This document shows positions 1 to 25,348 of a stretch of DNA of 33,575 bases, in pieces. Under the pieces are notes generated by a model. It saw only the letters and a list, made by a program, of their open reading frames with translations. It was not told the DNA's origin and ran no database searches. A program made the position numbers and the translations under genes. Each line of letters begins with the position of its first letter. The first letter of the stretch is position 1. The stretch covers positions 135,224,068 to 135,257,642 of the forward strand of contig NC_068982.1 of NCBI RefSeq assembly GCF_001194135.2, read 5' to 3'. The stretch is from Octopus bimaculoides. Taxonomy: Eukaryota.

Positions 1-273
1 ATATACAAATAATGAGAAAATGGAGGAAACCTCAGATTAGCAAACCCATTGATTGGACCACGTTTACAGCTTATTTTTTGATACAAATCATGACATAACA
101 AATAGGTGATGTAGCATGCTTTGTATTAGAAAATAATAAGCTATAAAGAAGGGGAAGAAGGACTGAATATAGTGGTTGGTTCACAACCTGAGGGATTGGA
201 CTTGACATGAATGATGGGCAAAAAATTAATGAGTGACTCAGGAATGTTTGGGAGGGTATGGCACAAACTCAGC

Positions 274-276
<3 letters not shown>

Positions 277-309
<33 letters not shown>

Positions 310-520
310 TTTGTGTTTATGTTTGTCCATACCGCCCACTACTTAGCTGATGTTGGTTCATTTAATTCCCCATAACCTGGCAGTTCAGCAAAAGAGAACA
401 ATAAAATATGTACCAGATTTAAAAAATGATTTAATACTGGGATTTAATACTGTTTGGCTAAAATCCTTACAAGGCAATGCTCCAGCATGGTCACAGTCCA
501 TTGGCCATTGTAGAAAGGCA
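277..520 (+). mobile_element. Degraded 3' half of SINE family B with (TG)n
   Basis: Matches the 3' half of the 19194-19630 copy (tgtgtttgtcc...ctccagcatgg). Confidence 0.7.
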
Positions 521-681
521 AAGGAAGGACATAGCTTGCTTATGAGTAAGAGACAGAAGTATTTGCTTAGTTGCTTTGTAGGATAATCTGTTCAGGTTTT
601 TGTAGAATAATATGGCTCATGGCATAATGAGGCAACATTTTCCAAGAATTGTAAAACAGAGTTCCATTTTATATTTTGCAG

Positions 682-752
682 ATACCAATTTTGTTTCAAG
701 TTAACTATATATAACCATTCACCAGGACCATGTAAATATATTGCTGGTGTTG
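682..752 (+). CDS. PON: Paraoxonase/arylesterase-like gene, first exon visible in the window (equivalent to PON exon 2); YQFCFKLTIYNHSPGPCKYIAGV
   Basis: ttttgcag acceptor at 679-681 and gtaagt donor at 753; 71 nt; PGPC motif carries the N-terminal disulfide Cys; splices in frame to the next exon. Confidence 0.88.
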
Positions 753-862
753 GTAAGTATTTTCTAAATATATTTTATGCAAAGGACAGACATTCTGAAT
801 ATGCTATTAACTTTATGAATGTATATTATTTATAGGTATAATCTTTGTTGTAGTTTCACATT

Positions 863-1382
863 GACAATAATGAGGTTCTTCGCTGCACCTCACTACTAAA
901 CGTTGAAGCCACCATTCTTTGCCATTGTCTCCGCTGGGCAGGTCACATCCAGTGTATGGAGCCCTCTTGTCTCCCGAGGGTCATGCTCTATGGAGAACTT
1001 CCAATTGGAACAAGATCCAGAGGAGGTCCGAAATTCCATTTTCAAGACCAGCTCAAACAGACCCTGGCTGAAATTAACACTTAGCCACCCCCATGAGAAC
1101 AGATTGCCATGGATAGAACAGCCTGGAAGACTGTTATCTGCAGTGGAGCCAGCTCCTTTGAGCAGATCAGACAACAGAATGAGGAGGTAAAGCGCAGGAG
1201 AAGAAAGGAACATCTTCAACTTCCTCGATCTGCACCGACCATACTGTGCGAATTCTGCCCCCGATTCTTTCACCATCGACTTTGTCTCCAAAGTCACATT
1301 CAGCACAGACATCTGCCAAGGAGACTGGACTGAAACTGATGAACCCAGTGCTCAGATATAAGCTGGAGCTGCCGATGATGAG
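863..1382 (+). mobile_element. RTE-clade LINE 3' remnant (ORF C-terminus with C2H2-like finger)
   Basis: One frame reads NEVL...LRWAGHIQCM...LPRVMLYGEL..G.RSRGGPK...DRTAW...CEFCPRFF...SHIQH with two stops; ends in gatgatga. Confidence 0.88.
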
Positions 1383-1745
1383 TTCCTCTTGTACAGTTGG
1401 CTTGTACATCAGGTAGCAAGATGTCTCTAATTAACCTGGTTTTGAGTCTAGTCATCTGTATCTCCTCAAGTGATGTTAAGTTGTCTTGGATCTTCTTCAA
1501 AGATGGTCGACTATGTCTTCTTGTGTTTCCCTCTTTTCTTTCATCTCTTTGATAGTGCCTATCATCTTGAGTAGTCATTCTTCTGGCAGTCAGAGAATAT
1601 GACCTGCCAGTCTCATTGTATTATCCATCACAGTCTCCTGCAGGCTGCACAGATTGACTCTTCTCAGGATTTATAAGAGTTTGTGATTCCATCTGTGGAA
1701 GGGATCTTGACTATTCTATGTAGACACCATTGGTGGAATGCTTTC
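1383..1745 (-). mobile_element. Second, different RTE-like LINE 3' remnant
   Basis: Minus strand reads MKAFHQWCLHRIVKIP..DGITN...MRLAGHIL*LPEE*, with frameshifts and stops. Confidence 0.75.
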
Positions 1746-1762
1746 ATATTGTATGTTTTATA

Positions 1763-1975
1763 AGATGGTGAGCTGGCAGAAACATTAGCATGCCAGGCGA
1801 AATGCTTAGTGGTATTTCATCTGTCTTATGTTCTGAGTTCAAATTCCGCCAAGGTTGACTTTGCCTTTCATACTTTCAGGGTCGATAAATTAAGTACCAG
1901 TTGCATACCGGGGTAGATCTAATCGACTGGCTCCCTCCCCCTAAATTTCGGCCCTTCTGCCTAGAGTAGAAAAGA
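1763..1975 (+). mobile_element. tRNA-derived SINE family A, full length, with 17-bp TSD
   Basis: agctggcagaa head and gagttcaaattcc B-box; identical atattgtatgttttata at 1746-1762 and 1976-1992. Confidence 0.92.
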
Positions 1976-2143
1976 ATATTGTATGTTTTATAGAAGCCCC
2001 TAAATACATACATGTAGATACAGCAGAAGGCCAAATCAAATCCAACCAAAAGACTTCCTCATCGCAGTACTCAAACCTATGTTACCATTATAGCAATCTT
2101 TCGATAAACATTACTTATTTATCATACTTGTTATTATTTTCAG

Positions 2144-2199
2144 AAAATGGCTCTGAAGATATGCATACTTTACCAAATGGCTTGACATTCATCACTTCT
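2144..2199 (+). CDS. PON: PON-like exon 3; (E)NGSEDMHTLPNGLTFITS
   Basis: tttcag acceptor and gtgagt donor; matches PON1 GSEDLEILPNGLAFISS, with Ca ligands E53/D54. Confidence 0.95.
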
Positions 2200-2561
2200 G
2201 TGAGTAGAATCTTTTTGCTTTGTTTTTCTCTTATTTCCTCAATGATTGACAGTAAAAGCAAGATACTCTTGTGGAAATGGTATGGGCTTATTGACTCATT
2301 GGTCTGGGGTTGAAATACATTTCAGGCATTTCATTGTTTATTTGCACACTGACAAAATAAAGTCAGTTCATTTATTTGAGGCCCTAACAAAGCTCAGGGT
2401 TCTGTCTTTCTTCTCCTGACTAAGTCATTAGACAAAAAAAAAAAAAAACCTTGGAGTCAGTGGCAACTAATGATTGTCTGTGTTGATGGACACCAATTAA
2501 TCAAATTGTTGTTGATTTGATTAATTTAACCCTAGTATTTTATGGACAGCATGTACAGTAT

Positions 2562-2995
2562 TGTTGGCACTCCGTTGCTTACGACGACGAGGGTTCCAGT
2601 TGATCCGATCAACGGAACAGCCTGCTCATGAAATAAACATACAAGTGGCTGAGCNNNNNNNNNNAACAGCCTGCTCATGAAATAAACATACAAGTGGCTG
2701 AGCACTCCACAGACACGTGTACCCTTAATGTAGTTCTCGGGGATATTCAGCGTGACAAAGAGTGTGACCATGCTGACTCTTTGAAATACAGGTATAACAG
2801 AAACAGGAAGAAAGAGTGAGAGAAAGTTGTGGTGGAAGAGTACACCAGGGTTCGCCACCATCCCCTGCTGGAGCCTCGTGGAGCTTTAGGTGTTTTCGCT
2901 CAATAAACACTCACAACACCTGGTCTGGGAATCGAAACCGCGATCCTATGACTGCGAGTCTGCTGCCCTAACCACTGAGCCATTGCGCCTCCACG
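2562..2995 (-). mobile_element. tRNA-derived SINE family D, full length, with 11-bp TSD
   Basis: Minus-strand A box (tggctcagtgg) and B box (ggtttcgattcc); atgtacagtat at 2551-2561 and 2996-3006; contains a 10-N gap. Confidence 0.88.
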
Positions 2996-3002
2996 ATGTA
3001 CA

Positions 3003-3130
3003 GTATGGCTAAATAGTTAAGAAGTTTGCTTCACAATCATGATTTAAGTTCAGCTCTGCTGTGGGGTGTCTTGGGAAACTGTCCTTTACTTTAGACCTGA
3101 ACCAATCAATGTCTCATATAAGTGGAACTG
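3003..3130 (+). mobile_element. Degraded SINE family B head
   Basis: Similar to the ggctgtgtggtaag...cttgggcaagtgtc...gaaactg head at 15895 and 33349. Confidence 0.6.
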
Positions 3131-3573
3131 ATAAATGGAAACTGTATGGAAGCCTGCCATATGTGTGTGTCTGCCACTCTCTTTCCACCCTTTTTAGAAT
3201 TTACTCACCTACCCACTCACCCAATCCAATCCTCTGTATCATTTCTCTTATATTCCCTTCTTTGTAATTTGTGGGTTTGCCCTGATTCTGGGCTAACCGT
3301 GTATCTTACTTACACCAAGACACCTTTTTTTGTCCCTCTATCCTACATTAACCTCAGATCACTTGGCATAAAGCCACCTGCCTCAACACTATACTCTTCC
3401 TCTTAGTTGGTCTAAAGAAAACAGTGATATGATGTATCCATCCGTTTGACATACTAGCATGGAAAAACAGACATTATACAAACAAAATTTCCTCCTTTAA
3501 ACTTCCAGTTAAAAATCAAACAAACAAAACAATTAATCAAACAAAATGTATTTTATATTTCAACATTTTCCAG

Positions 3574-3745
3574 GGTTTTCTTGTTGATTACCTCGTCCAG
3601 GGTAAGAACACTAATAGTATGGGACGTGTCCTTCTCTATGATATGTCTAAAGACAGTAACCAAGAAATCATTGAATTAGAACTCGAGAATTTTCATCCTC
3701 AGAGATTTGTTCCTCATGGTATCAGTGCTTGGCAAGATGATAATG
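3574..3745 (+). CDS. PON: PON-like exon 4; GFLVDYLVQGKNTNSMGRVLLYDMSKDSNQEIIELELENFHPQRFVPHGISAWQDDN(G)
   Basis: ttttccag acceptor and gtaagt donor at 3746; PHGIS motif (H115). A second in-frame AG at 3599-3600 makes the 5' boundary slightly uncertain. Confidence 0.92.
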
Positions 3746-3887
3746 GTAAGTTGTATTTGAAGTTTTGAGCAATCTTTTATTTTGACTCTGGTTTCAGCCA
3801 TTGGACTGCAACCCATGTTGGACTGTCACCTTCAAGTGCTTTTGGTCCATCATAACCAGTGGCAGCTCATATATAGGCACTGAGGTA

Positions 3888-4070
3888 TATATTAATTATA
3901 TTTCGGCCAGAGTTATTTCGTCACACTTCTGTGACCTCATGAACAGGAATACAAAATGACAGATCGTTAGTAAGGAGAGACACACAAAAAACGAAAGAGG
4001 AAAGCAAAGGATCACTGATGAGGTCACAGAAGTGTGACGAAAGAACTCTGGCCAAAATACAATTAATATA
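3888..4070. repeat. Fold-back inverted repeat, 53-bp arms (3888-3940 / 4018-4070)
   Basis: Arms are reverse complements with 3 mismatches and no indel; 77-nt spacer; lies in PON intron 4. Confidence 0.95.
4009..4053 (+). ncRNA. Hammerhead ribozyme-like motif (type I, minimal)
   Basis: CTGATGA 4015-4021; stem II GTCACA-GAAG-TGTGAC; GAAA 4039-4042; weak stem III AG-aa-CT; CUC triplet; stem I GG(A)TCA/TGGCC. One extra G precedes stem II. Confidence 0.55.
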
Positions 4071-4335
4071 AAATAAAACTGAAGCAAGTGAACACCAAAT
4101 ATATAGTGCATATGTTTTTATTGGCTAAGCTGGCAACATGACCATCCCCAAATACAACAATAACTATTTATAAGTGTTTCACTTTCTCATAGTTTTATAT
4201 CTCTGTCTTCTGTTCTTTCCAGACATGTCCTCTCGGCCTGTGTAATATTGTAATTATATTATTTCCATATGTGTATATATTACATCATTCTGTTGATCTT
4301 AATTTATTTTTGAATCTATTGATATCTTTATAAAG

Positions 4336-4459
4336 GGAAAGTCACTGTTTTTGTGGTAAATCATTTGGTGAAAGGAGACCAAATCGAGTCCTTTGAATAT
4401 CTTCCAGAGAAAAAAGCACTTCGACACGTAACTTCATTTAAAGATGGCAGCATGAGAAA
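4336..4459 (+). CDS. PON: PON-like exon 5; KVTVFVVNHLVKGDQIESFEYLPEKKALRHVTSFKDGSMR(N)
   Basis: taaag acceptor and gttagc donor; VVNH motif (H134); phase 1 in and phase 2 out fit both neighbours. Confidence 0.93.
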
Positions 4460-4599
4460 GTTAGCTTTTTTTTCTTATATTTTCCTTCTACTTTTTTTTT
4501 TTTTTTAAAGAAGAGATCTATTTTGTGCTTATTTATTTTTTTAACTTTTTTTATTGGCATATTTTAGCTTTTGTAAGATTTAACTGAAAGCATCATCAC

Positions 4600-4837
4600 A
4601 TGTGGCTGTGTGGTAAGAAGCTTGCTTCCGAACCACATGGCTCTGGGTTCAGTAGTACCTGTATTTCAAAGGGCCAGCTTTGTCACACTCTGTGTCATGC
4701 TGAATCTCCCAGAGAACTACTTTAAGGGTACATGTGTCTGTGGAGTGCTCAGCCACTTGCATGTTAATTTTACAAGCAAGCTATTCCATTGATTGCATCA
4801 GCTGGGACCTTCGTCGCCATAACCGATGGAGTGCTCT
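4600..4837 (+). mobile_element. Chimeric SINE: family B head joined to the family D 3' module
   Basis: 4600-4653 matches the B head up to its B box; 4654-4837 matches the reverse complement of the D 3' part at about 2570-2800. Confidence 0.8.
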
Positions 4838-5032
4838 CATATTTGACAGAGCAATCTGAATAGTAAAGAGTTAATGCATTAAACACTTTTTTCCCCAAAA
4901 TACGCACTGCTGTAATTGTGGTGCATCTAAGATGTCAGTGCATCTTTTATGCCATCAAATATTGCATTTAAAGAAAATCAAAAATCAAAAACTGGTTTTT
5001 CTTTCTTATGTATTATTGTTTCTTATTTGCAG

Positions 5033-5233
5033 TGTAAATGATGTGGTGGCTACCAGCAACAAAACCTTCTATTTCACCAACTGGTCACACTACAGGAATT
5101 TTATTGGCAGACTCCTCGAGATGTTCTTGCTTTTGCCATGGACCCATGTATACTACCATGATGGCGAGGTTTACCGATTGGTTGCTGAGGATTTAGTTAT
5201 GGCTAATGGCATAGCGATGTCAAATGATGAAAA
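5033..5233 (+). CDS. PON: PON-like exon 6; VNDVVATSNKTFYFTNWSHYRNFIGRLLEMFLLLPWTHVYYHDGEVYRLVAEDLVMANGIAMSNDE(K)
   Basis: tttgcag acceptor and gtaagt donor; ND (N168/D169) and ANGI (N224) are 56 residues apart, as in PON1. Confidence 0.95.
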
Positions 5234-5392
5234 GTAAGTTCTTGCTTTGAAACTATCAAGTGTTTTGATTCTTCACTGATAAGGTTTGTGTTCTGTTAGT
5301 AATTACAAAAGTTGTTATTGAATATCAGGCTGGTTGTATTTCTATGATCATTCATAGAATATGTGAACTCTGATCGAAATGTATTGGGTCTA

Positions 5393-5700
5393 GTGCTACA
5401 AAAAAGAAACTACACCGCATACCAATTTGGCATTTAATCTCTTTTGAAGTAGTTCCTTTCTGAACTTATTGATCTTATTGATGGAAGTGATCTTATTGAT
5501 GGAAGTATTCTTGGAACTCCTCTTTTGGGATAGTGAATAGCTGCCTTGAAATCTTGTTCCTTTCAACTGGGATCTGATTTTTGCCCTGGTTTCAGGGTCA
5601 TAGCCATAGATCCACAATTCTTCATCCGTTATGACCATTTTCAAAAAGTTTTCATCTTCATTGACACAATCATGGAGATCCTGATCTTTCTGAGACAACC
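5393..5700 (-). mobile_element. Internally deleted mariner (DD34D-type) transposase remnant
   Basis: DENFLKMVITDEELWIYGYDPET (cf. FLxRxITGDETWxYxYDPET) joined to a C-terminal IPKEEFQE segment; 18-bp tandem duplication at 5471-5506. Confidence 0.8.
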
Positions 5701-5846
5701 TCACTCTACACACTTTAAGTCCAAGCATGTATGTGTATATGTATATATATGTGTGTATGTCTATATATGTATGTGTATATGTATATATGTATATATATGT
5801 GTGTGCATATGTATGTATGTAAATGTGTATATATGTGTGTGTGTGT

Positions 5847-6160
5847 GAAGGCATGTGACTTAGTGGCTGGGATATATGGCTCACAATCATAAGGTCATGT
5901 GTTCAATTCCTGGTAGCGTGTTGTGTTCTTGAGCAAGACACTTTATTTGTTATTACTCCAGTTTACTCAGGTGGAAAAAATTGAGTTGTACCTGTAGTGC
6001 AAAGGGCCATCTTTGATGTACTCTGTTTCACACTGAATCTCCCTATGAACTATGTCACGGGCATGTATGTTTGTGGAGAACTCAGCCACTTGCACATTAA
6101 TTTCACGTGCAGGCTATTTGTTTGACCATATCAACTGGAATACTTGTCGTTGTTAGTGAC
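5847..6160 (+). mobile_element. SINE with an E-type tRNA head and the family D 3' module
   Basis: Head matches the reverse complement of 29560-29691 (ttcttgagcaagacacttt); tail matches the D module. Confidence 0.72.
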
Positions 6161-6215
6161 AAATGTCAGGCACATATATATGTATGTGTATATGAGTGTG
6201 TATGATATATATATA

Positions 6216-6490
6216 CAAGGTGATTCAAAAGTCTCCATACATTGGAAAAAGTTTTTTTATAAGAAACAGTTTATAAGATCCCTTAGATCCCCTGATCTGA
6301 CCCCTCTTGATTTCTATCTTTGGGGACATTTGAAAGGCATGGTATATTGCAGAAAAATAAATGACATAAATGATTTGAAGGAATGCATCACCAACTCATT
6401 TGCATACATATTACCAGATGTGCTATTACGAGTTCACAATGAGTGGAGTAAACGTATTGCAATGTGTATTCAAAACAATGGTAACCATTC
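6216..6490 (+). mobile_element. Tc1/mariner-superfamily fragment: left terminus fused to a transposase C-terminus
   Basis: TA followed by CAAGGTGATTCAAAAGT; then RSPDLTPLDFYLWGHLKGMVY...RIAMCIQNNGNH. Confidence 0.85.
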
Positions 6491-7330
6491 GATATTCTTT
6501 ATACAAGATGAGAAAGGGCCAATTTTTATCCCAAGCCATCAAGGACAAGAGGGAAGACCGTGCTAAGAAGCTTTTGTACAAATTCAAGCATCCCCTCCAA
6601 CTGAACATGCTTTGGTTTTTCTCGGACAAAAAAAATATCTGCTAGGATCAGATGGTGGGTGAATACACAGAACAACCGTTGGCTTGCCATGTGCCCAAAA
6701 TATGTACTGAGAGTGATAAAAATCAAACATCCAGTCAACATCAAGGTGTTTGGCATGATCACTTGTGATGGTGATATTATGCCTCCATTCATTTCCCCAC
6801 ACAGCCTCAGACTCAACATGGAGGCCTACATCAAGTGCCTGGAGGAGGTAGTGCTGCCCTGGGTCAAGAGGGTGGCTGCTGGAAGACCCTGTATCTGGCA
6901 ACAGGTCTCTACACCATCCCACACTAGCAGGAGAACCCAGTCATGGCTGTCAAACAATTTCTGTGACCACATCACCCCTAACGTCTGGCCACCTCACTCC
7001 CCAGACTGCAACCCTCTTGATTATTATGTGTGGGGTGCAGTTGAATGAGAGACCAACAAAACTCATTGTTATACCAAAGATGAACTGAAGGCAAGGATTA
7101 TGGCAACATTCACCAACTTAAATAAGGAGACAGTCCAGAAGAGTTGCAGGAGATTCCGAAGTCGTCTGGAGGCTGTGGTTGAAGCCAATGGCGATTTTAT
7201 TGAATAAATTTATTCTTTAGTATTTCAAGATACTTTTATGTAATTTTGGTAAATATATCTGTTAAAATGAAATGTCAGTGTTATTTTCATTTTTGTGTAA
7301 TTTAGACGACAATTTATTCACCGCACCCTG
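6491..7330 (+). mobile_element. maT / DD37D transposon, 5'-truncated pseudogenised copy with right terminus
   Basis: FFSDKK, WQQ(V)S and WPPHSPDCNPLD motifs; 37 residues between the second and third catalytic positions; second D mutated to V; ends ...CACCCTG followed by TA at 7331. Confidence 0.92.
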
Positions 7331-7517
7331 TATATGATATGTAAACACACCCATGCTAGCATGGAAGGCAGATGTTAAACAATGATGATGATGGTGATGA
7401 TGTACTGTAATTTGAATGCATAAAGAAATTGCTGATGATACCAGTTCTATAAATAATTGTTTGTAAAGATATTGCTTGATAACAACGTTTAATATAACCT
7501 TGTTATCTCTATTAAAG

Positions 7518-7599
7518 GTTTATCTATGTTGCCTGTACAATGACAAAAGATATCAAAGTGTTTAAACGAGACACAGACAATCGGCTTGTATTTCACCAG
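7518..7599 (+). CDS. PON: PON-like exon 7; FIYVACTMTKDIKVFKRDTDNRLVFHQ
   Basis: attaaag acceptor and gttagt donor; aligns to PON1 YVYIAELLAHKIHVYEK; phases 2/0 fit. Confidence 0.9.
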
Positions 7600-8655
7600 G
7601 TTAGTACTTGTTATCAATAATTTGCTTTACATCTGTTTAGGGCAGCTTTCTTTCCCCAACCTCTTAAAAATTATGCATATCTAAATGTCTGATGCATGTG
7701 GACTTTCACATGGCAATTTCTGTTGTGTCTAGCTCCAGGTTACTCCTGATCCAGTAAGATCTATGATCAAAAGAGTTCATGCCATCTCGTGGACCATATT
7801 GTCTAATATGTACTTCTTTTTTCGTAAGAGAGTATTTCTAGCAGTTTGAGAGACTGCACAGATGTTCTCCATTATTTGTATCTACCATTTTTTTCATATG
7901 CAGTAATCTGTCTATGACTGATGCAGTTCTCAGAATATCTTGTGTTAAGCCTAAGAAAAGTATACTCTTAATTTAAAATTAAAAAATTTATGTTAATTAA
8001 AGATGAATATCTACCTTGCTGCCCCCCGCCCTTGAGGTCGCAGATATTTTGATGTAACTTTTTTTCTACTGAACCAAATCTCAAACTCTTTATGCCAAAG
8101 TGTAACTGAAGGGCTGTCCTCTTTAAAACTATTAACAGTTTGCAATTTAGTTGAGAACTGAATTAGTAGTGAATCTTGGAAGCTGCTGCAATTGACGAAA
8201 TGGTGGACTTAAGAATATATTCAACCACAACCGGGTTGAATGATAGATCACCCATGTAAATTATCAGTTCTTGAATAACGGTGCTTCTTCTTGTCCCATA
8301 ATGAGAACTAAGTCGAATACTCTGAATTAATAAAACTTATTGGGGTGATTCTGTTACCTCTGCTAGTGTCTGCTTTTTCTTTTGAAAGCTAAATGTATTA
8401 GCCACATCATAGAGGTTCTACCTATGGAAGGGTGAGAAGTTGGCACAACGATAGACCTGACCAATTGCATTACACTGTTTAATTGCATAACTCTACATTC
8501 TGATTTCAGTTCTTGTAACTTACCTGGCCCTTTTTCTTCTAAGGGTGTTGTTGGTCAATAAAATAAGCATGTTGGGTTTATTTAATCCTCAATTCCTCTC
8601 AAATATTGGGTTTGCCTGTATGTAAAGTATTTATTTTAATATTGTTTTGCTTCAG

Positions 8656-8787
8656 GAATTTATGCTGGACTCAATTGTTGATAACCTCTCTGTTGATCCT
8701 GAGGGTAATATATGGGCCGGGTGTCATCCTAGATTTTTGAGCGTTGTGAGTTACATGGACAACTATACTCTTGGTTCACCTTCTCAG
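8656..8787 (+). CDS. PON: PON-like exon 8; EFMLDSIVDNLSVDPEGNIWAGCHPRFLSVVSYMDNYTLGSPSQ
   Basis: ttcag acceptor and gtaaga donor; VDNxSVDP (D269/N270) and WxGCHP (C284/H285) motifs. Confidence 0.96.
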
Positions 8788-10097
8788 GTAAGACATAAAA
8801 TAAAGGATAAACATTTTGCTAACACCTGTAATAATTAGACAACTTTGGGTACAAATCTAAAAAACGTACGTATGTCTTAAAAATGTTATATGAATATGTT
8901 GGGGGTTGGCCAATGAACCTGTTCTAAATTTTAGTTTCTTGGTGTTTAAGAAACAAGAAATAAAATTGTCTTTAGGATGGGATGCCAGTCTGTCACAGGC
9001 CTCAAAATATCTGACTCCTCCTCCTCCTCCTGGGGTTACGTTACTTGCAACCAAAGGATGGACAATAATATTTAATCTGTCCCCTGTTTAAAGATGGTGG
9101 GAATATTCCAGAGAGTGTCTAGAATTGTGAACGTCTAGAATTGAAAAAATAATCTGTAAAACAAAGTAATTACCATAAAGGGAAGTAACTTAGTAAAATA
9201 TCGGAATAACAGCGCACTTTATATAACATGAAGACGTTCTGTTATTTGACGAATAACACTGGAAAAGAAATATGGGAGCTGTGTCAAAATTAAAAAAATG
9301 GTAGAAATAAACTCCACTCCTCAATAAACTTATTCATTATTCTTCATACAAATCTGACATTGCAAGCCTTTATTTCACTTCAACGAAATGGAAGCGTAAA
9401 CTTTTCTGTTTCAGAGTAAGTGAAAAATGTAAGGGAGGGAACTTCGTGTTAAGTTATGTCCTTAGAAGCGAAGTGGTATCGTTTGAAAATTTCTAATTAT
9501 TTACATACGTAAATGCATAAATTCATTTATTTGTACGTATAGGAATACAAGCAAGCATACGTGCGTTTGTCCATACAGACATCCATACATCTATCTATAC
9601 ATCTATGTATACATACTAATTCACCTATCTACACATTTATGCATACATCTACATATACACACTTTGATGGATGGAAACATGAGACGTGTACTTCTGTCTA
9701 TACTTGCATACAAACATGGATATATGCAGAAGTCTATCTAGCAATACCTGTATGCTTAAATAAATCTTTGCACGCATGTACATATGTGCAGATACATTTA
9801 TTTATAAATATGCACAAGTTTCACGTGTATACAACTGTTTTTCTATGTCTGCATACATGCATCTACAATATCATTCAAGCCTCTATCTCTACACACATAC
9901 ATGTATATATTTATATATCTATATATACTTAAAGGCTTCTGTCTGTCCATATATGCATACATTTGCCTAAGAATGCATACATGCTTAAATTTATCTATGT
10001 TTGGTCATCTATACATGCATACATCTATCTATCTGTACAAAGCTTTCCTTCAAAATTTCATCTTAATTTATATTTCAAGCATTCTCTTTGATATTAA

Positions 10098-10538
10098 TCC
10101 ATTAGAGACTGCCCCTAGTTCTATGACATAAACTTCCTGTATTTAAGCGGTCTAAATTAAAAGCTTCCATCAAAATTCCATGTTGGTTTATATGCCAAAT
10201 ACCAACTTAATAACTAAAATGTTAGAGAAAAACAACTAGTTTTAAATCACTGAACGAGAGATACACAGTAGCAATACCGAATAGTAAAGTTTATACGCCA
10301 ACAGAATGTGGCAGTCCTTTAAAGGACGATGTTATTGTTGTATCCATTGTTGTTTTATTTTTGTTTTATTTTTTCCTGGGGCTAAAACAACAGTAACATC
10401 GTCCTTTATAGGACTGCCGCATTCTGTTGGCGTATAAACTTTATTAACTAAGATGTTATTTTACTAAATTCTTCATTATTTCCAAAACGAATTAAAACAA
10501 AGGCAGTGAATTTCAACAGAAATATGGTAATCAAAGGG
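10098..10538. mobile_element. TTAA-flanked, piggyBac-like MITE interrupted by a 220-bp insert
   Basis: TTAA at 10094-10097 and 10539-10542; right end AAAGGG; degenerate left end TCCATT. Confidence 0.55.
10282..10446. repeat. Fold-back inverted repeat, 60-bp arms (10282-10341 / 10387-10446)
   Basis: Reverse-complement arms with 4 differences, no indel, 45-nt loop; in PON intron 8. Confidence 0.95.
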
Positions 10539-10614
10539 TTAATTGTGAACTGGGGAGTAAGTTGATTATCAACCATGCAGACAAATGCTGAGGTTAACAA
10601 CCCATTAATATATT

Positions 10615-10825
10615 TGGTGAGCTGACTGAATTGTTAGCACATGGCAAAATGCATAGTGGTATTTCATCTGGCCTTGCATTCTGAGTTCAAATTCTGCCAA
10701 GGTTTACTTAGCCATTCATCCTTTCAGGGTTGATAAAATGAATACCACTTGAGTGCTGGGGGTCAATGTAATCAACTTACCTGCTTCTCCAAAATTCCTG
10801 GCCTTGTGCTAAAATTTGAAACCAG
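10615..10825 (+). mobile_element. SINE family A, older copy
   Basis: ggtgagctg...ttctgagttcaaattctgcc...ctttcagggttgataa. Confidence 0.8.
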
Positions 10826-10986
10826 TATCATTGTTATTGCATTCTCAATGTTTATGCCTATCAAATTATGTTTCACGTGCTACAACTGTTTTTCTATGTC
10901 TGCATATGTGCATCTACAACATCATTCAAGCCGCTATCTGTCTTTTTGCATTTAAGCCTCTATCTTATTCAAGCCTCTATCTTATT

Positions 10987-11213
10987 TCTATATCGCCCAC
11001 AAGAGGCTAAACATAGAGGGGACAAATAAGGACAGACAAATGGATTAAGTCGATTACATCGACCCCAGCGCGTAACTGGTACTTAATTTATCGACCCCGA
11101 AAGGATGAAAGGCGAAGTCGACCTCGGCGGAATTTGAACTCAGAACGTAACGGCAGACGAAATACCGCTAAGCATTTCGCCCGGCGTGGTAATACTTCTG
11201 CCAGCTCGCCGCC
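10987..11213 (-). mobile_element. SINE family A, young copy with 19-bp TSD, inserted in the minisatellite
   Basis: ttcaagcctctatcttatt at 10968-10986 and 11214-11232. Confidence 0.9.
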
Positions 11214-11630
11214 TTCAAGCCTCTATCTTATTGCATTCAGGCCTCTATCTATCTTATTGCATTCAAGCCTTTGTCTATCTCCTGGCATTCAAGCCTCTGT
11301 CTATCTTATTGCATTCAGACCTCTGTCTGTCCTATTGCATCCAAGCCTCTGTCTATCTAGTTTCTGGCATTCAACACTCTTATTATATTGCATTCAAGCC
11401 TCCACCTATCTTCTGGCATTCAAGCCTTTATCTATCTTATTGCATTCAAGCCTTTCTCTATCTTACTGCATTCAAGCCTCCACCTATTTTCTGGCATTCA
11501 AGACTTTATCTATCTTATTGCATTGAACCCTCTATCTATCTTATTGCATTCAAGTTTCTGTCTATCTTATTGCTTTCAAACCTCCACCTATTTTCTGGCA
11601 TTCATGCCTCTATCTATCTTATTGCATTCT
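11214..11630. repeat. Minisatellite of about 26 bp (consensus near GCATTCAAGCCTCTATCTATCTTATT), about 16 copies
   Basis: CATTCAAG recurs about every 26 nt; extra units at about 10920-10985. Confidence 0.9.
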
Positions 11631-11696
11631 TTATGTTTATGCCTATTAATTTTGTTTAGTATTCTGAGATATTCCTGTTTTCTTTTAATTACACAG

Positions 11697-11864
11697 GTTT
11701 TAAAGCTTGAAGTAAAAAATGGATTGATAAAATCAATGAAAGAGATCTATTCCAACGATGGATCCATGCTGTCTGGTTCCAGTTCAGCTTCATTTTATCG
11801 AAACCACACACTTATCGGAAGTATGTGGGAAAAGTTAGTAATATGTGATGTTCTTTATATGTAA
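11697..11864 (+). CDS. PON: PON-like last coding exon; VLKLEVKNGLIKSMKEIYSNDGSMLSGSSSASFYRNHTLIGSMWEKLVICDVLYM-stop
   Basis: acacag acceptor; matches the PON C-terminus (IY..DG..L.GS..AS, LIG, C353-equivalent Cys); TAA at 11862-11864. Confidence 0.95.
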   Translation, partial: VLKLEVKNGLIKSMKEIYSNDGSMLSGSSSASFYRNHTLIGSMWEKLVICDVLYM

Positions 11865-11955
11865 TTTAATATTCCTTAAACTAGATTATAAAATATTCAA
11901 CCATGAATATCTTTAGTTTTCTTATCTTTTCTAAAATGCTTTTCGTGACAATTTC

Positions 11956-11961
11956 ATTAAA
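11956..11961 (+). promoter_or_regulatory. Candidate polyadenylation signal (ATTAAA) for the PON-like gene
   Basis: First common PAS hexamer I found after the stop codon (about 90 nt downstream); no transcript evidence. Confidence 0.25.
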
Positions 11962-11989
11962 TGTTTCCCCCCCACCACCACCGTCTTCA

Positions 11990-12225
11990 TCACCATCATT
12001 ATCATTGTTTAATGTCCCTGTTTCATCATGGTATGGGCTGGATGGTTTGACAGAATTCAGTGGGTCCAAGGAACTGCATCAAGCTCTAATGCTTGATTTG
12101 GCAGGGTCACTCTGGCTGGATGCCCTTCCCTTATGCTAACCATTTTACGGCATGTATTGAGTGCACTTTTTTGTGCCACCAGCACTGTTGAGGTTGTCAT
12201 GCTGCTTGCAAGACTGCGAACCCTG
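11990..12225 (-). mobile_element. Repeat F (LINE-type 3' tail) fragment
   Basis: Reverse complement of the ggaagggcatccagc...acattaaa-(gat)n tail seen at 17225-17368. Confidence 0.7.
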
Positions 12226-12710
12226 ATGGAGAAGATTTACACTTAGAGATGACAGGGTTAAAGTAGGAAAGTAGGGACCAGCGTAGAACAGGTTTTTTGT
12301 TGTACAGAGGCTACATGAACTGCACATGTTTTGGAAGACAGGGTGGATGTGATGGGGTGGAGCTGGAAAGAGATGAAAGTAGTGATGTTGAGGGTGAGGT
12401 GGTGTCAAGGTGGATCCTCAAGGTATGATCTCAGTAGAAGGGGTTGCGGGGTATCATCAGAACTAGGTGTGTTGCGGTGGGTGCAGGTATGGGGAGTGAG
12501 AGACGGGGATGGGTGAAGGGAAGGAACACAAGTGACAGCTGTAAAGATTGGATTGGGTTGGAAGGGCAAGGATGGATGTAGTGAATGCTGGTGGAAGTAA
12601 TTTATTCTTTAAATTAGCCTTATTTGTTGAGAATTTGTTAGGGACTTCTGGGTTTTGGTTTGAGTGATTCATTTTTTTTTTGTATTTGGTTTGTCTAATA
12701 AATCAGAAGC

Positions 12711-12750
<40 letters not shown>

Positions 12751-12751
12751 T

Positions 12752-13036
12752 TGGTGGTGAGCTGGCAGACTCGTTAGCGTGATGGACAAAATACTTAGTG
12801 GCATTTCGTCTGTCTTTACTTTCTGAGTTCAAATTCTGCCAAGGTTGACTTTGCCTTTCATCTTTTTGGGGCCGATGAAATAAGTACCAGTGGAACACTG
12901 GGGTTGATATAATTTACCAGCTGCTCCCCAATCAAATTTCAGACCTTGTGCCTATAGTAAAAAAGGATTATTATTGTTGTTGCTGTTGTTGCTACTGCTA
13001 CTGCTACTACTACTACTACTACTACTACTACTGCTG

Positions 13037-13076
<40 letters not shown>

Positions 13077-13305
13077 AGCGAGCTGGCAGAATCGTTAGCA
13101 TACTGGACAAAATGCTTAGTGGTATTTCGCCTGGTGATATTTTCTGAGTTCAAATTCCGCTGAGATTGACTTTGCCTGTCAACCTTTTGGGGTTGATTAA
13201 ATAAGTACCAATTACACACTGGGGTTGATGTAATTGACTTGATCCTCTCCCCCAAGCTGCCCATGTGGAAAAAATTTTAAATCATCATTATTATTATTAT
13301 TATTA
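12752..13305 (+). mobile_element. Two head-to-tail SINE A copies separated and flanked by (TTA)n/(CTA)n
   Basis: (ATT)n 12714-12750, SINE 12752-12967, triplet run 12968-13076, SINE 13077-13287, (ATT)n. Confidence 0.85.
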
Positions 13306-13412
13306 TCTTGTACTTGCCATCATCAGATTATTGTGATCTGAATACTTGCAACATCAGAATGTTCTCCTCTAAAGAGACACAACTACTGGATGATCCCACA
13401 AAGATGCATATA

Positions 13413-13978
13413 CGTGGGTGAGTAAAAAAGTAATGCCATTTTGTTTAGGACAGGTATAATTACCAACACAGGAACATGTATCATACATCATAATGAAGCT
13501 GGTCCTCTGTGGATCACATCCCTACTTCTCAAAATAGTCACCGTTTCTTTCAATTGCAATGTTCCACCTTCGAATGAGAGCATGTATCCCTGCCCCGTAA
13601 AATTCTGTTGACTGTTCTTTGAGCCACTTCTTTACTACAGTTTTTACTTCGTCATCACTGGACTATCTTCATCATTGGCCTATCATCTCTTTGGCCCCAT
13701 GAAAGAGGGCTTGAGAAGCAAACATTATTCCAGTGACGAGGAAGTGAAAACTGTAATGAAGAAGTGGCTCAAAGAACAATCAACAGAATTTTACGGGGCA
13801 GGGATACATGTTCTCATTCGAAGGTGGAACATTGCTATTGAGAGAAACGGTGACTATGTCGAGAAGTAGGGATGTGATCCACAGAGGACCAGCTTCATTT
13901 TGATGTATGATACATGTTCCTGTATTGGTAATTATACCTGCCCTAAACAATATGGCATTACTTTTTGACTCACCCTCG
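13413..13978. mobile_element. Mariner-derived fold-back MITE with 250-bp arms made from the transposase 3' end
   Basis: TA at both ends; arms 13413-13662 and 13729-13978 have 17 mismatches by hand count and no indel; right part encodes YHLFGPMKEGL...NGDYVEK-stop. Confidence 0.93.
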
Positions 13979-13989
13979 TAGCATATTCT

Positions 13990-14142
13990 ATAAAGTGGTT
14001 GGCATTAGGAAGTGCATCAAGCCATAGAAACTGTGCTGAAGCAGACATGGGAGCATTACACTTTTTCAAGCTGTCGGATCCTTGTTGGACCATCCTGCCC
14101 ATGCCCAATAGGAAAGATGGATGTTAAAAAGTGATGATGATG
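13990..14142 (+). mobile_element. Repeat F tail fragment
   Basis: gtggttggcattaggaagtgcatc...gatgttaaaaagtgatgatgat. Confidence 0.65.
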
Positions 14143-14184
14143 GAGATTATGTGCTTATGTTGCAAAATACTGGTTTCAGTTTTT

Positions 14185-14390
14185 GGCACAAGGCCAGCAA
14201 TTTTCGGTTTCAAGGAAGGAGCAAAGTCAATTACATCAACCCCAGTGTTTTACTGGTACTTAAGTCGTCAACCTTGAAAGGATGAAAGGCAAAGTTAACC
14301 TTGATGGAATTTGAACTTAAAATGTGGAGATGAATGAAATGCCGCTAAGCATTTTGTACAGCATGGTAGTAATTCTGCCAGCTTGCCATC

Positions 14391-14422
<32 letters not shown>

Positions 14423-14640
14423 CCTTTCTACTCTAGGCACAAGGCTTGAAATCTTTGGGGAGGTGGGGATGGGCAGTCGATTAGATTGACCCCAGTACAC
14501 AACTGGTACTTAATTTATCGACCCCGAAAAGATGAAAGGTAAAGTTGACCTTGGCGGAATTTGAGCTCAGAATGTAAAGACAGACGAAATACTGCTAAGC
14601 ATTTCGCCAGGCGTGCTAATGTTTCTGCTTGCTTACCATC
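14185..14640 (-). mobile_element. Two head-to-tail SINE A copies separated by (AAT)n
   Basis: Two reverse-complement A units with (AAT)n at 14393-14421. Confidence 0.82.
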
Positions 14641-15894
14641 TTTAACAAGAATAATGTTGACAGCAACAATAATAATAACGACTGTTTCAAATTTCGACAC
14701 AAACCCTACAATTTTGAGAGAAGTGGTTTTGATAATATCATTTGACTCTGGTGTGAGCTGAAGATGACAGGCACAGTTAACCTGACTGAGATTTGAACTC
14801 AGAACGGTAAGTGTTGGGACAAAATGTCACAAGGTATTTTCCAAATTGCTAATGATTTTATCATTATTCCACACTTAATGATTATTTCTAATTCAGGCAT
14901 AAGACCAGAAAATTTGATGTGGGACAAAGATCAGTTGATTAAATTGATCCAGTATATTATTTAGACATTTCTGTTTGTAACAAGTTTAACATTTTTTCAG
15001 GTATAATGTATCATGGTCTATATTATCCAATATGTTCTTTGTTTCCTTCTTTTAGTTGGTTGTGTATTTGTTAAGAGAATCGGCTGTTATTTCTAGCTAG
15101 GGAAGTTGAAGTGTAGAAATTCCTTCGTCGATTCTGGTGGTCATTACGTAGATGAAATAGCTGGAGTTACTTCCCTTTAATACTAGTGATTTTCGTTTCA
15201 TAGTTATCTCATTTGTGTTCGGAGAATTTCTTATATAGAAAACGTCTTTCTGTTGAGTCTTCCGTCCTAGTTTCGTGTCTCAGCTTTAGGTATATCACTT
15301 CACGTACACCCTTAACTCTTTTTAAAAAGGCATTATGTTACAAACTTCTTTATTCACATTTCTTTTTCCACAAGGATTTTATGCTTTATTCTGAATTCGT
15401 ATGTTCAACTCCTCCGAGACTGTTGGTGCTAGAACAACGAAACTCAAATCCTTAATCCCAGGGAATGACCTAAAGGGGTCTATTTTATTAAGGGACACCT
15501 AACTGGGACCCCCACTGAACCCTCTCCTATTTTTACTGCATTTTATACTAAATACATAGCAATGGCGACCGATATTGGATCAATGACAATGAATTTTATG
15601 CCATGAACTCCCAGGGAGTATTGTAAGGAGATTCAATTTCTGAAGGGCCGCCTAAATGGGGCCCCACTGACCCCACTGTTTTTACTGCATTTACCTCGCT
15701 CCTATGCTTATTGATTAAACTATGACTGGCATCAGTACGTAGCACATTTACAGAAATAAGTTTGTGCATTCTAAATACCTTCATTTAAATGAAGACAAAG
15801 AGTTATAACGGGTACATTTAAAGTATGGCAGTGGAGATGTTTATATTTTGTAGATTATGAAACTTATATCTTGCTTGTATATGTATATGTATAT

Positions 15895-19102: not shown

Positions 19103-19193
19103 NNNNNNNNNNNNNNNNNNNNNNNNNNNNNNNNNNNNNNNNNNNNNNNNNNNNNNNNNNNNNNNNNNNNNNNNNNNNNNNNNNNNNNNNNNN
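19103..19193. other. Assembly gap (91 N)
   Basis: N run after (TA)n. Confidence 1.
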
Positions 19194-24635: not shown

Positions 24636-25110
24636 GGATGCATAATATTAACCACACATTATAATCCATTTGTCCACAGAGAAAAATATATCGTATAGAT
24701 ATGCCAAACGATGCCCTGAGCATGGCAGGGCAATAATATTCCTTTGATTTTTCCGTTGTTTAACCATTTTTCTGTTCTGTGTATTACAAGATATACACTG
24801 AATATATTTTCCTGGCGTCCATGCATTGTATATGATACACATTTCAATTTTTTTAAACCAATAAAATAACATTAGACTTATGAAAGGAAATATTTACTCT
24901 GGCACGAAACAAGGGGTAGCCCTAAAACAAGCATGGACGTTCGTGACAAACTTATGAAAATGCTTTGGACAGGCAACGGGTTCAGTCACAAAATACCGAG
25001 ACGTAAGTACTGAATATAAAATAATTCCATTTAAATATCATGTTATCCAAGTCAGATATCATAGCTATATTAAATATATATATAAAAAAATAATAAATAT
25101 AAATACGCCA

Positions 25111-25348
25111 TTTTAAAGCCTAGCCAGGCTCATGGGCCCGGTTTCAATAGCGTATGTGTTCCTCAGCTGGACGGGACACCAGTCCATCGCAGCGTTATTA
25201 ATTTTTGCTAACTGAGTGGACTGGAGCAACGTGAAATGAAGTGTTTTGCTCAAGAATCACAACGCGTCACCCGGTCCAGGAATCGAAACCACAATCTTAC
25301 GATCATAATGCTGACACCCCTAACCACTAAACCACGCGCCTCTACCAC
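25111..25348 (-). mobile_element. tRNA-derived SINE family C
   Basis: Minus-strand A box tggtttagtgg and B box ggtttcgattcc; body contains ttcttgagcaaaacactt and gcgatggactggtgtcccgtccag. Confidence 0.85.

What the first reader, a model, noticed from the sequence alone, without database searches (positions are those of the whole stretch)
3888..4077. Hammerhead-like motif in PON intron 4 caged by its own antisense copy
Seen: on the PON sense strand, CTGATGA (4015), a 6-bp stem II with GAAG loop, GAAA (4039), a CUC triplet (cut after 4048), stem I GG(A)TCA/TGGCC, and AATAAA at 4072-4077. Most of this is the right arm of a 53-bp inverted repeat. The left arm (3888-3940) is transcribed first, and read on the minus strand its core is broken (TTCATGA). 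Established: Penelope-like elements carry minimal type I hammerheads and often leave inverted terminal copies. Inference: the long hairpin would sequester a ribozyme that could otherwise cut the pre-mRNA about 290 nt before exon 5. It could be passive neutralisation or a switch; two A-C mismatches would be favoured ADAR sites. Caveats: an extra G before stem II and a 2-bp stem III may make it inactive or dimer-dependent.
Basis: partly seen in the sequence, partly recalled or inferred. Interest (0 to 1): 0.72.

Follow-up and report, generated by a model that had tools for sequence, protein, structure and literature searches.

The report
Penelope-type hammerhead relic in octopus intron
The hammerhead-ribozyme motif inside an inverted repeat in an octopus paraoxonase-gene intron is real, but it looks like ordinary debris of a Penelope-like retrotransposon insertion that is decaying at the neutral rate, not a regulated 'caged' ribozyme.

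Summary
The window is Octopus bimaculoides chromosome CM046602.1. The feature lies in a 590-nt intron (3746-4335) of a PON3-like gene.

The motif at 4009-4053 fits the published descriptor of the minimal type I hammerhead (min-HHR) of Penelope-like elements (PLEs). The 'extra G' is a hallmark of that class, not a defect. A full-descriptor scan gives 2 hits in 157 kb of octopod DNA against 0.01 in shuffles.

The 53-nt inverted repeat is the stump of a larger one. The orthologous intron in the O. sinensis/vulgaris assembly has 154-nt arms, so the right copy runs to about 4165-4169. Its end is A+C-rich and abuts ATTTAT.

Head-to-head copies with one 5'-truncated are the known PLE insertion architecture. 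A second, unrelated min-HHR about 12 kb upstream of the window start has the same layout.

There is no sign of selection. Between species the HHR is 91% identical, against 87-91% for the surrounding intron, and helix II is damaged in the other species. The hairpin outcompetes the ribozyme fold by 47 kcal/mol. Even without the left arm, helix I forms with probability 0.005.

Verdict: an ordinary transposon relic. PLE ancestry is inferred, not proven.

The parts
3574..3745 (+). Upstream coding exon of the PON3-like gene (ends ...PHGISAWQDDN-G); donor GTAAGT at 3746
3746..4335 (+). 590-nt intron that hosts the element. It lies between coding exons 5 and 6 of NCBI model P0001 and is homologous to vertebrate PON intron 4.
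3825..3887 (.). O. bimaculoides-specific junction segment with no clear counterpart in the ortholog. It marks where the outer ~100 nt of the left arm were lost. The other species has 2.8 kb of SINE-rich DNA here.
3888..3940 (-). Left arm: an inverted copy of the element, 5'-truncated inside the CUGAUGA box. On the minus strand it reads TTCATGA...GAAAT, so the core is broken. Only the inner 53 of the ancestral 154 nt remain.
3941..4008 (+). Spacer between the arms, present in both species at 89.7% identity. It is possibly the 5' continuation of the right-hand copy; its origin was not determined.
4009..4053 (+). Minimal type I hammerhead motif: helix I 4009-4014/4049-4053 (A4011 bulged), CUGAUGA 4015-4021, unpaired G4022, helix II 4023-4028/4033-4038 with loop GAAG, GAAA 4039-4042, helix III 4042-4047, C17 = 4048 (putative cleavage after 4048)
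   Evidence: class features from PMC4209133
4016..4169 (+). Right arm at full ancestral extent: the 3'-terminal fragment of the inserted element. The last 40 nt are 70% A+C, and the arm abuts the AT-rich flank ATTTATAAG.
4072..4077 (+). AATAAA hexamer. It is lineage-specific (AATATAG in the other species, on both arms), so it is not a feature of the element.
4336..4459 (+). Downstream coding exon (G-KVTVFVVNH...GSMR)

Best explanation
The feature is the decaying relic of one insertion of a Penelope-like element, or of a non-autonomous element mobilised by PLE machinery, into this PON-like intron.

The insertion happened shortly before O. bimaculoides and the O. sinensis/vulgaris lineage split. 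Two 3'-terminal fragments were laid down head-to-head. This is expected if the PLE endonuclease/reverse transcriptase cuts and primes on both target strands.

The right-hand copy is sense to PON and kept a complete PLE-type min-HHR about 120 nt from its A+C-rich 3' end. The left-hand copy was truncated at position 4 of the CUGAUGA box. Later, O. bimaculoides lost the outer ~100 nt of the left arm, which left the 53-nt repeat.

In the PON pre-mRNA the two arms form a long intronic hairpin. That is a generic ADAR-type dsRNA substrate. The hammerhead is inert baggage.

Shown: the motif, the repeat, its larger ancestral form, the neutral divergence, the thermodynamics, and the recurrence of the layout.
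Inferred: PLE ancestry, the both-strand priming origin, and the lack of cleavage in vivo.
For: 1) Fit to the published PLE min-HHR class (PMC4209133):
- CUGAUGA/GAAA/UH core.
- An unpaired nucleotide between A9 and 10.1.
- A G10.1-C11.1 pair.
- A 6-bp helix II.
- A 5-bp open helix I.

2) Descriptor statistics. There are 2 hits in 157 kb of octopod DNA against 0.01 in 200 dinucleotide shuffles. The same descriptor finds two PAc-like min-HHR motifs in an Anolis PON2 locus, used as a positive control.

3) The ortholog has 154-nt arms, 84% complementary, with a 72-nt spacer. All 10 variable columns in the inner 55 nt of the four arm copies are singletons. The arms were therefore identical at speciation, and the ancestral right copy had the intact HHR.

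4) Architecture and geometry match published PLE biology:
- An inverted 5'-truncated copy adjacent to the unit (PMC8557442).
- Dual min-HHRs on opposite strands 100-700 bp apart (PMC4209133).
- The Anolis PLE protein cleaves and extends both strands, starts reverse transcription in an AC-rich stem-loop roughly 90 nt beyond the HHR cut site, and targets AT-rich ATT sites (PMC11167929).
- Here the arm ends 117-121 nt past the cut, its last 40 nt are 70% A+C, and the flank is ATTTAT.

5) A second, unrelated min-HHR (L001 ~3232-3170, minus strand) is also one arm of a head-to-head repeat whose partner has a broken core.

6) No constraint is visible. Identity between species is 41/45 for the HHR, 90.8% and 90.6% for the arms, 89.7% for the spacer and 86.9% for the rest of the intron. 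In the other species helix II reads GUCACA/UGUAAU, with a C-A mismatch.

7) Octopus genomes carry many Penelope families (PMC13282606).
Against: - No PLE ORF, pLTR homology or any other copy of this sequence family was found in the ~157 kb of cephalopod DNA available.
- A translated-arm protein search and an exact-pattern metagenome scan also found nothing. Family membership therefore rests on motif and architecture only.
- Loop 3 (AA) is not palindromic, unlike the class consensus.
- No target-site duplication is visible at the ends of the full repeat in the ortholog.
- Rfam hammerhead models give no hit. They also miss the two control min-HHRs.
- The main PLE expansion reported for O. vulgaris (~56 My) is older than this insertion appears to be, although recently active Penelope families are also listed there.
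Confidence: 0.75

Rival explanations
1. One reading: an active self-cleaving hammerhead that could sever the PON pre-mRNA is held in check by its antisense copy, either as selected neutralisation or as a switch (for example, ADAR editing or unwinding of the hairpin releases cleavage).
For: - The hairpin does exclude the HHR fold at equilibrium.
- The left arm is transcribed first.
- O. bimaculoides has exceptional hyper-editing of inverted-repeat dsRNA (PMC5625713).
- O. bimaculoides retains the ancestral, intact HHR sequence.
- Retrozymes are reported to be depleted from introns in Xenopus (bioRxiv 10.64898/2026.07.22.740005).
Against: - There is no excess conservation of the HHR or of arm complementarity, and helix II is damaged in the ortholog.
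- Even without the left arm, helix I forms with probability 0.005.
- Helix III cannot close as a monomer, and a dimer would carry A-A mismatches.
- No cis partner copy exists.
- PLE min-HHRs are inactive as monomers, or protein-assisted (PMC4209133, PMC11167929).
- The same layout occurs at an unrelated locus and is the standard PLE insertion product.
- Intactness in O. bimaculoides is unsurprising. About 2 substitutions are expected in 45 nt per lineage, giving P(0 or 1) of about 0.4 (hand calculation).
Confidence: 0.03
2. The inverted repeat is a non-autonomous DNA transposon (a MITE or foldback element with long terminal inverted repeats), and the hammerhead-like motif at its inner arm boundary is coincidental.
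For: - The overall shape fits: 380 bp in the ortholog, 154-nt arms, a short loop, and AT-rich surroundings.
- No retroelement ORF lies nearby.
- TIR elements expanded about 25 My ago in O. vulgaris (PMC13282606), close to the apparent age.
- Mariner-like remnants lie in the same gene.
Against: - No target-site duplication and no recognisable superfamily terminal motif are present.
- The full HHR descriptor is about 200-fold enriched over shuffles in this DNA.
- It carries class-specific extras that were not imposed by chance: an unpaired nucleotide after A9 and a G10.1-C11.1 pair.
- The second HHR locus has the same head-to-head layout.
- The A+C-rich end and the ATT-type flank match PLE insertion biochemistry.
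Confidence: 0.12
3. The hairpin itself is the functional unit, for example an ADAR-recruiting element that affects PON splicing or a small-RNA precursor, and the hammerhead is irrelevant.
For: - The structure is very stable (z = -11.5).
- Generic miRNA-hairpin Rfam models score on it below threshold.
- It is retained in two species.
- Both A-C mismatches arose by G-to-A change in the O. bimaculoides lineage.
Against: - The arms accumulate uncompensated changes in both lineages: 3 mismatches in O. bimaculoides and 6 in the other species over the inner 53 nt.
- Two thirds of one arm was deleted in O. bimaculoides.
- The Rfam hits are to plant or unrelated families, far below gathering scores.
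- A 53-bp stem with a 77-nt loop is not the shape of a pre-miRNA.
Confidence: 0.05

Closest known systems
Minimal hammerhead ribozymes (min-HHRs) of metazoan Penelope-like elements (Cervera & de la Pena 2014, PMC4209133)
   Same: Type I topology; the CUGAUGA...GAAA...UH core; an unpaired nucleotide between A9 and 10.1; a G10.1-C11.1 pair; a long helix II (6 bp); a short open helix I (5 bp); a tiny helix III; mostly solitary dispersed copies; pairs on opposite strands 100-700 bp apart.
   Different: Loop 3 (AA) is not palindromic. No pLTR or ORF context was shown. No genomic family with covariation was shown. Cephalopod examples did not turn up in the papers searched.
PLE insertion architecture: an inverted 5'-truncated copy next to the unit, from both-strand cleavage and extension (Craig et al. 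2021, PMC8557442; Frangieh et al. 2024, PMC11167929)
   Same: Head-to-head copies with common outer (3') ends; one copy truncated; an HHR about 100 nt from an A+C-rich 3' end; an AT-rich target.
   Different: Both copies here are very short (154 nt, and at least 160 nt). No full-length unit, tandem pLTR or 30-40 bp 'tail' could be identified.
Non-LTR retrozymes and HHR-bearing SINE-like elements (Schistosoma Sm-alpha; Cervera & de la Pena 2020, PMC7229834; bioRxiv 10.64898/2026.07.22.740005)
   Same: Short non-coding elements that carry a type I HHR and are thought to depend on PLEs. The second locus (L001 3127-3599) even has a tRNA-like head.
   Different: The window's element is not tandemly repeated, and no circular-RNA unit can be defined. 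Canonical retrozyme HHRs have helix I/II loop contacts, which are absent here.
Conserved intronic hammerheads of amniotes (Rfam HH9/HH10; de la Pena & Garcia-Robles 2010, cited in PMC7229834)
   Same: A hammerhead motif on the sense strand of an intron of a protein-coding gene.
   Different: Those are ultraconserved, stable monomeric ribozymes. This one evolves neutrally, is thermodynamically marginal, and gets no Rfam hit.
Inverted-repeat retroelement pairs as ADAR hyper-editing substrates (Porath et al. 2017, PMC5625713)
   Same: A long, nearly perfect intramolecular dsRNA formed by two inverted copies of a repeat in one pre-mRNA. Octopus is an extreme case, and lizard Penelope elements are heavily edited.
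   Different: Editing at this locus was not examined. Nothing distinguishes it from the many other such hairpins.

Membership tests
PLE-type minimal hammerhead (min-HHR) | Catalytic core C3-U-G-A-N-G-A9 ... G12-A-A14 ... U16.1-H17 in type I order | tested here: met
   CTGATGA 4015-4021, GAAA 4039-4042, U4047-C4048
PLE-type minimal hammerhead (min-HHR) | Unpaired nucleotide between A9 and 10.1 | tested here: met
   G4022; the feature is listed in PMC4209133
PLE-type minimal hammerhead (min-HHR) | G10.1-C11.1 pair and a long helix II (6-8 bp) | tested here: met
   G4023-C4038; 6 Watson-Crick pairs; loop GAAG
PLE-type minimal hammerhead (min-HHR) | Short (4-5 bp) open helix I | tested here: met
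   GG(A)UCA/UGGCC gives 5 pairs with one bulge and one G-U. Helix I is weak: probability 0.005 in the 150-nt context.
PLE-type minimal hammerhead (min-HHR) | [quoted passage not shown] | tested here: inconclusive
   G15.2 and C16.2 are self-complementary, but loop AA is not. A dimer helix would be A-U, G-C, A.A, A.A, C-G, U-A. The cofold prediction did not use it.
PLE-type minimal hammerhead (min-HHR) | Belongs to a multi-copy genomic family that shows covariation in helices I and II | not testable with these tools
   No octopus genome search was available. There are 0 further copies in 157 kb. The only comparison, with the ortholog, shows one disruptive and several neutral changes.
PLE-type minimal hammerhead (min-HHR) | Self-cleavage (as a dimer or protein-assisted) | not testable with these tools
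   Needs experiment
Penelope-like element insertion | RT plus GIY-YIG ORF, or demonstrable pLTR homology | tested here: not met
   No such ORF was seen in the window, L001 or L002, nor in the 2.8-kb extra segment of the ortholog. These were checked by ORF lists and visual inspection of six-frame translations, not by a profile search. Absence is expected for heavily 5'-truncated copies, so this does not exclude PLE origin.
Penelope-like element insertion | Inverted 5'-truncated copy adjacent, with common 3' ends facing outward | tested here: met
   154-nt arms head-to-head in the ortholog; the left copy is truncated at U4 of the core
Penelope-like element insertion | 3' end in an A+C-rich segment about 100 nt past the HHR; AT-rich (ATT) target | tested here: met
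   The arm ends 117-121 nt after the cut site; the last 40 nt are 70% A+C; the flank is ATTTATAAG. Compared with PMC11167929. This is suggestive, not diagnostic.
Rfam hammerhead families (RF00163 and relatives) | Covariance-model score at or above the gathering threshold | tested here: not met
   No hammerhead hit even at E<=10 on a 63-nt slice. The same models miss the textbook min-HHR at L001 3222 and a PAc-like Anolis min-HHR motif, so the test has no power for this class.
MITE / DNA transposon | Target-site duplication and a superfamily-specific terminal motif | tested here: not met
   The flanks of the full repeat in L002 (GTTGAAAC | ... | ATTTATAA) share no duplication

The most novel reading that the evidence does not exclude
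The intact sense-strand hammerhead in O. bimaculoides is a conditionally active ribozyme. Heavy A-to-I editing, or helicase unwinding of the intronic hairpin, frees it, possibly with help from a PLE-encoded or host chaperone. It then cuts the PON pre-mRNA 287 nt upstream of the next exon. That would couple the exceptional RNA-editing activity of octopus to transcript abundance.
Probability: 0.02. Interest if true: 0.75.

Novelty: new member of a known kind. Interest (0 to 1): 0.17.

Why it matters
As it stands, this is a clean worked example rather than a discovery.
- It shows that PLE-type minimal hammerheads occur in octopus genes.
- It shows that they sit in the head-to-head inverted pairs that PLE insertion produces.
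- It shows that such pairs automatically create long intronic dsRNA. That is the kind of substrate behind the very high hyper-editing load of octopus transcriptomes.

A practical point follows for genome scans. Rfam hammerhead models are blind to this abundant class, so descriptor-based searches are needed, and 'caged ribozyme' configurations will turn up routinely as by-products.

Only if cleavage were demonstrated in vivo would it bear on ribozyme-based gene regulation.

Tried and rejected
- Rfam at gathering score and at E<=10: no hammerhead hit. The only hits were sub-threshold plant or other miRNA-hairpin models on the long repeat, which I judged spurious. Controls show the hammerhead models miss min-HHRs in general.
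- Searches for further copies all found nothing: the window, all cephalopod loci by blastn and nhmmer, JGI metagenome contigs by exact degenerate 28-mer, and papers by sequence string.
- A protein search with translated open segments of the arm consensus, meant to fish ORFs called on other copies, gave no hits.
- The idea that the 2.8 kb present only in the ortholog next to the left arm is a full-length PLE was rejected. It has no long ORFs, its translations look SINE-like, and it contains a tRNA-Arg-like SINE head.
- A PLE ORF starting at the AUG inside CUGAUGA, as in the Anolis PAc element, was rejected. All copies share a TAA stop 17 codons on.
- I tried to obtain a PLE RT query from Argonauta and Anolis loci. 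Only LINE-type RT fragments turned up.
- The supplements of the two key PLE papers are not held, and Lunse et al. 2017 is not held.
- The bacterial promoter/terminator scan is irrelevant to a eukaryotic intron.

Full report
**Where the window comes from**
A concatenation of the PON-like exon peptides found in the window hits 'serum paraoxonase/lactonase 3 [Octopus bimaculoides]' (P0001) best. The next hits are an O. vulgaris/sinensis protein (P0002) and two Argonauta hians paralogs. The locus that encodes P0001 (L001; GCA_001194135.2, chromosome CM046602.1) is 100% identical to window 1-14864. The finding lies in a 590-nt intron, 3746-4335, between exons 3574-3745 and 4336-4459. In the NCBI model this intron lies between coding exons 5 and 6. 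It is homologous to vertebrate PON intron 4.

**The observation**
- GG(A)TCA, 4009-4014.
- CTGATGA, 4015-4021.
- An unpaired G at 4022.
- Helix II GTCACA/TGTGAC with loop GAAG, 4023-4038.
- GAAA, 4039-4042.
- A 2-bp helix III around loop AA.
- C17 at 4048.
- TGGCC, 4049-4053.
- AATAAA, 4072-4077.

The inverted repeat has arms 3888-3940 and 4018-4070, 53 nt, 94% complementary, with a 77-nt spacer. Its 25-nt core occurs only at these two places, with 0 expected. The three arm mismatches include two A-C. Taken alone, 4005-4060 folds with helices I and II as drawn. Its energy (-9.7 kcal/mol) is no better than shuffles, with z = -0.67.

**Is the motif more than chance?**
- Core plus a helix II of at least 6 bp plus GAAA is expected about 0.01 times per window in dinucleotide shuffles.
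- I used a fuller descriptor: core, 0-1 extra nucleotide, helix II of at least 4 bp, GAAA, UH, and helix I of at least 4 bp. It gives 2 hits in 157 kb of octopod DNA against a mean of 0.01 in 200 shuffles.
- The same style of scan finds two PAc-like min-HHR motifs in an Anolis PON2 locus, which I used as a positive control.
- Rfam hammerhead models do not hit the motif, even at E<=10 on a 63-nt slice. They also miss the textbook min-HHR described below and the Anolis one. The Rfam negative therefore carries no weight for this class.

**What class of hammerhead it is**
Cervera and de la Pena (PMC4209133) define the minimal HHRs of metazoan Penelope-like elements by these features:
- A long helix II.
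- A short open helix I.
- An unpaired nucleotide between A9 and 10.1.
- A conserved G10.1-C11.1 pair.
- A vestigial, palindromic helix III that implies dimeric action.

The window's motif meets all of these except the palindromic loop 3. The same paper notes that most such motifs are solitary, and that some occur as pairs on opposite strands 100-700 bp apart.

**The repeat is a stump of a larger one**
The orthologous intron in assembly GCA_006345805.1 (L002) carries an inverted repeat with 154-nt arms, 25086-25239 and 25312-25465. The arms are 84% complementary with a 72-nt spacer. By my own knowledge this assembly is O. sinensis, formerly labelled O. vulgaris.
- The window's right arm aligns over its whole length, so the right copy extends to about 4165-4169.
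- The left arm in O. bimaculoides is cut off at 3888. Window 3825-3887 has no clear counterpart in the ortholog. The other species has 2.8 kb of SINE-rich DNA there instead.
- The last 40 nt of the arm are 70% A+C, and the arm abuts ATTTATAAG.
- AATAAA is an O. bimaculoides-specific change from AATATAG.

**History of the four arm copies**
In the inner 55 columns, all 10 variable positions are singletons. The two arms were therefore identical at speciation, and the ancestral right copy carried the intact HHR that O. bimaculoides still has.
- Both left copies begin at TGATGA, preceded by unrelated sequence. That copy was 5'-truncated inside the core from the start.
- Later hits to the left copies: G-to-C in O. 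bimaculoides (giving TTCATGA), and G12-to-U in the other species (giving TAAAG).
- In the other species' right copy, helix II has become GUCACA/UGUAAU, with one wobble and one C-A mismatch.
- Between species, identity is 41/45 (91.1%) for the HHR, 90.8% and 90.6% for the arms, 89.7% for the spacer and 86.9% for the rest of the intron. This is the neutral intronic rate.
- About 2 substitutions are expected in 45 nt per lineage, so an intact motif in one lineage is unremarkable (hand calculation).
- The homologous introns of the two Argonauta paralogs (758 and 855 nt) contain no repeat, no HHR and no similarity.

**The architecture is generic**
About 12 kb upstream of the window start, in the same gene region, L001 ~3232-3170 (minus strand) reads CCCAAGACAC-CTGATGA-A-GGCTGG-AGAGTATA-TCAGCC-GAAACGTT|G.
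- This is a textbook min-HHR: an extra A, a 6-bp helix II, no loop 3, and a palindromic CG.
- It belongs to an unrelated sequence family.
- It is also one arm of a head-to-head inverted repeat, with arms 3127-3293 and 3433-3599, 167 nt, 93% complementary.
- The partner arm has a broken core (CTAAAGA).

PLE insertions are known to carry an adjacent inverted 5'-truncated copy (PMC8557442). The purified Anolis PLE protein cleaves and extends both target strands. It starts reverse transcription in an AC-rich stem-loop roughly 90 nt past the HHR cut site, and it prefers AT-rich ATT targets (PMC11167929). The geometry here matches those properties. Octopus genomes contain many Penelope families, and the O. 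bimaculoides/O. vulgaris split is put at 13-33 My (PMC13282606).

**Mechanism in the transcript**
- The arms fold into a hairpin of -78.4 kcal/mol, with z = -11.5.
- Forcing helices I and II of the HHR costs +46.7 kcal/mol, and their equilibrium probability is 0.
- The ribozyme fold is marginal even without the left arm. In 3941-4090, helix II forms with probability 0.98 but helix I with only 0.005.
- A 2-bp helix III cannot close over a 2-nt loop (standard RNA folding rule: minimum hairpin loop is 3 nt). A dimer would have two A-A mismatches, and there is no second sense copy.
- Published min-HHRs do not cleave as monomers and cleave poorly as dimers (PMC4209133). The Anolis one cleaves only with its own protein and is dispensable for insertion (PMC11167929).
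- Long inverted-repeat hairpins are the standard ADAR hyper-editing substrate. O. bimaculoides is an extreme case, and lizard Penelope elements are heavily edited (PMC5625713). Editing here is plausible but would be generic.

**What remains unproven**
- I could not search an octopus genome.
- No other copy of this family and no PLE ORF or pLTR homology was found in the DNA available.
- Indirect fishing also failed.
- No target-site duplication is visible.

PLE or PLE-dependent ancestry is therefore the best-supported inference (about 0.75), not a demonstrated membership. A long-TIR DNA element with a coincidental motif remains possible (about 0.1). The 'caged or switchable ribozyme' reading is not excluded by sequence alone, but it has no positive support (about 0.03).

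**Verdict**
The identification as a Penelope-type minimal hammerhead with an inverted partner is supported. The functional interpretation is not supported. This is a new example, in a cephalopod gene, of a known kind of transposon relic. Interest is low.

Noticed in passing
L001 3127-3599 (O. bimaculoides; locus position = window position + 15174, so about 11.6-12 kb upstream of the window start): A second, unrelated min-HHR lies on the minus strand at ~3232-3170: CTGATGA-A-GGCTGG...TCAGCC-GAAACGTT. It sits in a head-to-head inverted repeat with arms 3127-3293 and 3433-3599, 167 nt, 93% complementary. The partner arm's core is broken (CTAAAGA). The 139-nt spacer holds (AAT)n/(AAC)n and a tRNA-like SINE head, which suggests an HHR-bearing SINE-like element. 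No ortholog was seen in the L002 stretch fetched.
   Followed up: partly
window 1760-1990: A copy of an abundant tRNA-derived octopus SINE, flanked by the direct repeat TGTATGTTTTATA. At least 15 related copies occur in L001 and L002.
   Followed up: no
window 6126-7045: Frameshifted Tc1/mariner-type transposase remnants (…DLTPLDFYLWGHLK…, …PHSPDCNPLDYYVWG…) inside a PON intron.
   Followed up: no
window 11222-11629: A 26-nt minisatellite, 15.7 copies, 75% matches (consensus TCTATCTTATTGCATTCAAGCCTCTA), just upstream of the last PON coding exon. It produces long spurious ORFs.
   Followed up: partly
window 3898, 3915 and 4054: All three arm mismatches in O. bimaculoides are changes specific to that lineage. 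Both A-C mismatches arose by genomic G-to-A substitution, one in each arm. With n=2, this is compatible with ordinary transition bias.
   Followed up: partly
window 3900-4058 (minus strand): The Rfam plant MIR395 model scores 36.6 bits (E 2.7e-06; gathering score 56) on the long hairpin. Other miRNA-precursor models also score weakly. I judged this an artefact of any long, near-perfect hairpin.
   Followed up: partly
L005 10890 (+) and 17169 (-) (Anolis carolinensis PON2 locus): Two PLE-type min-HHRs (CTGAGGA-T-GCCTGC...GCAGGC-GAAACGTC) lie within 36 kb of the lizard PON2 gene. They were used as a positive control. Rfam hammerhead models miss them.
   Followed up: partly
L002 17800-19077 and L003 25220-26557: Intact-looking LINE-type reverse-transcriptase ORFs of 426 and 446 aa (YLDFAKAFDKVDH…SYADDTK) lie in or near the PON loci of the O. 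sinensis/vulgaris assembly and of Argonauta.
   Followed up: no
window 2655-2664, 19103-19193 and 25504-25701: Assembly gaps (runs of N, 299 bases in all).
   Followed up: no
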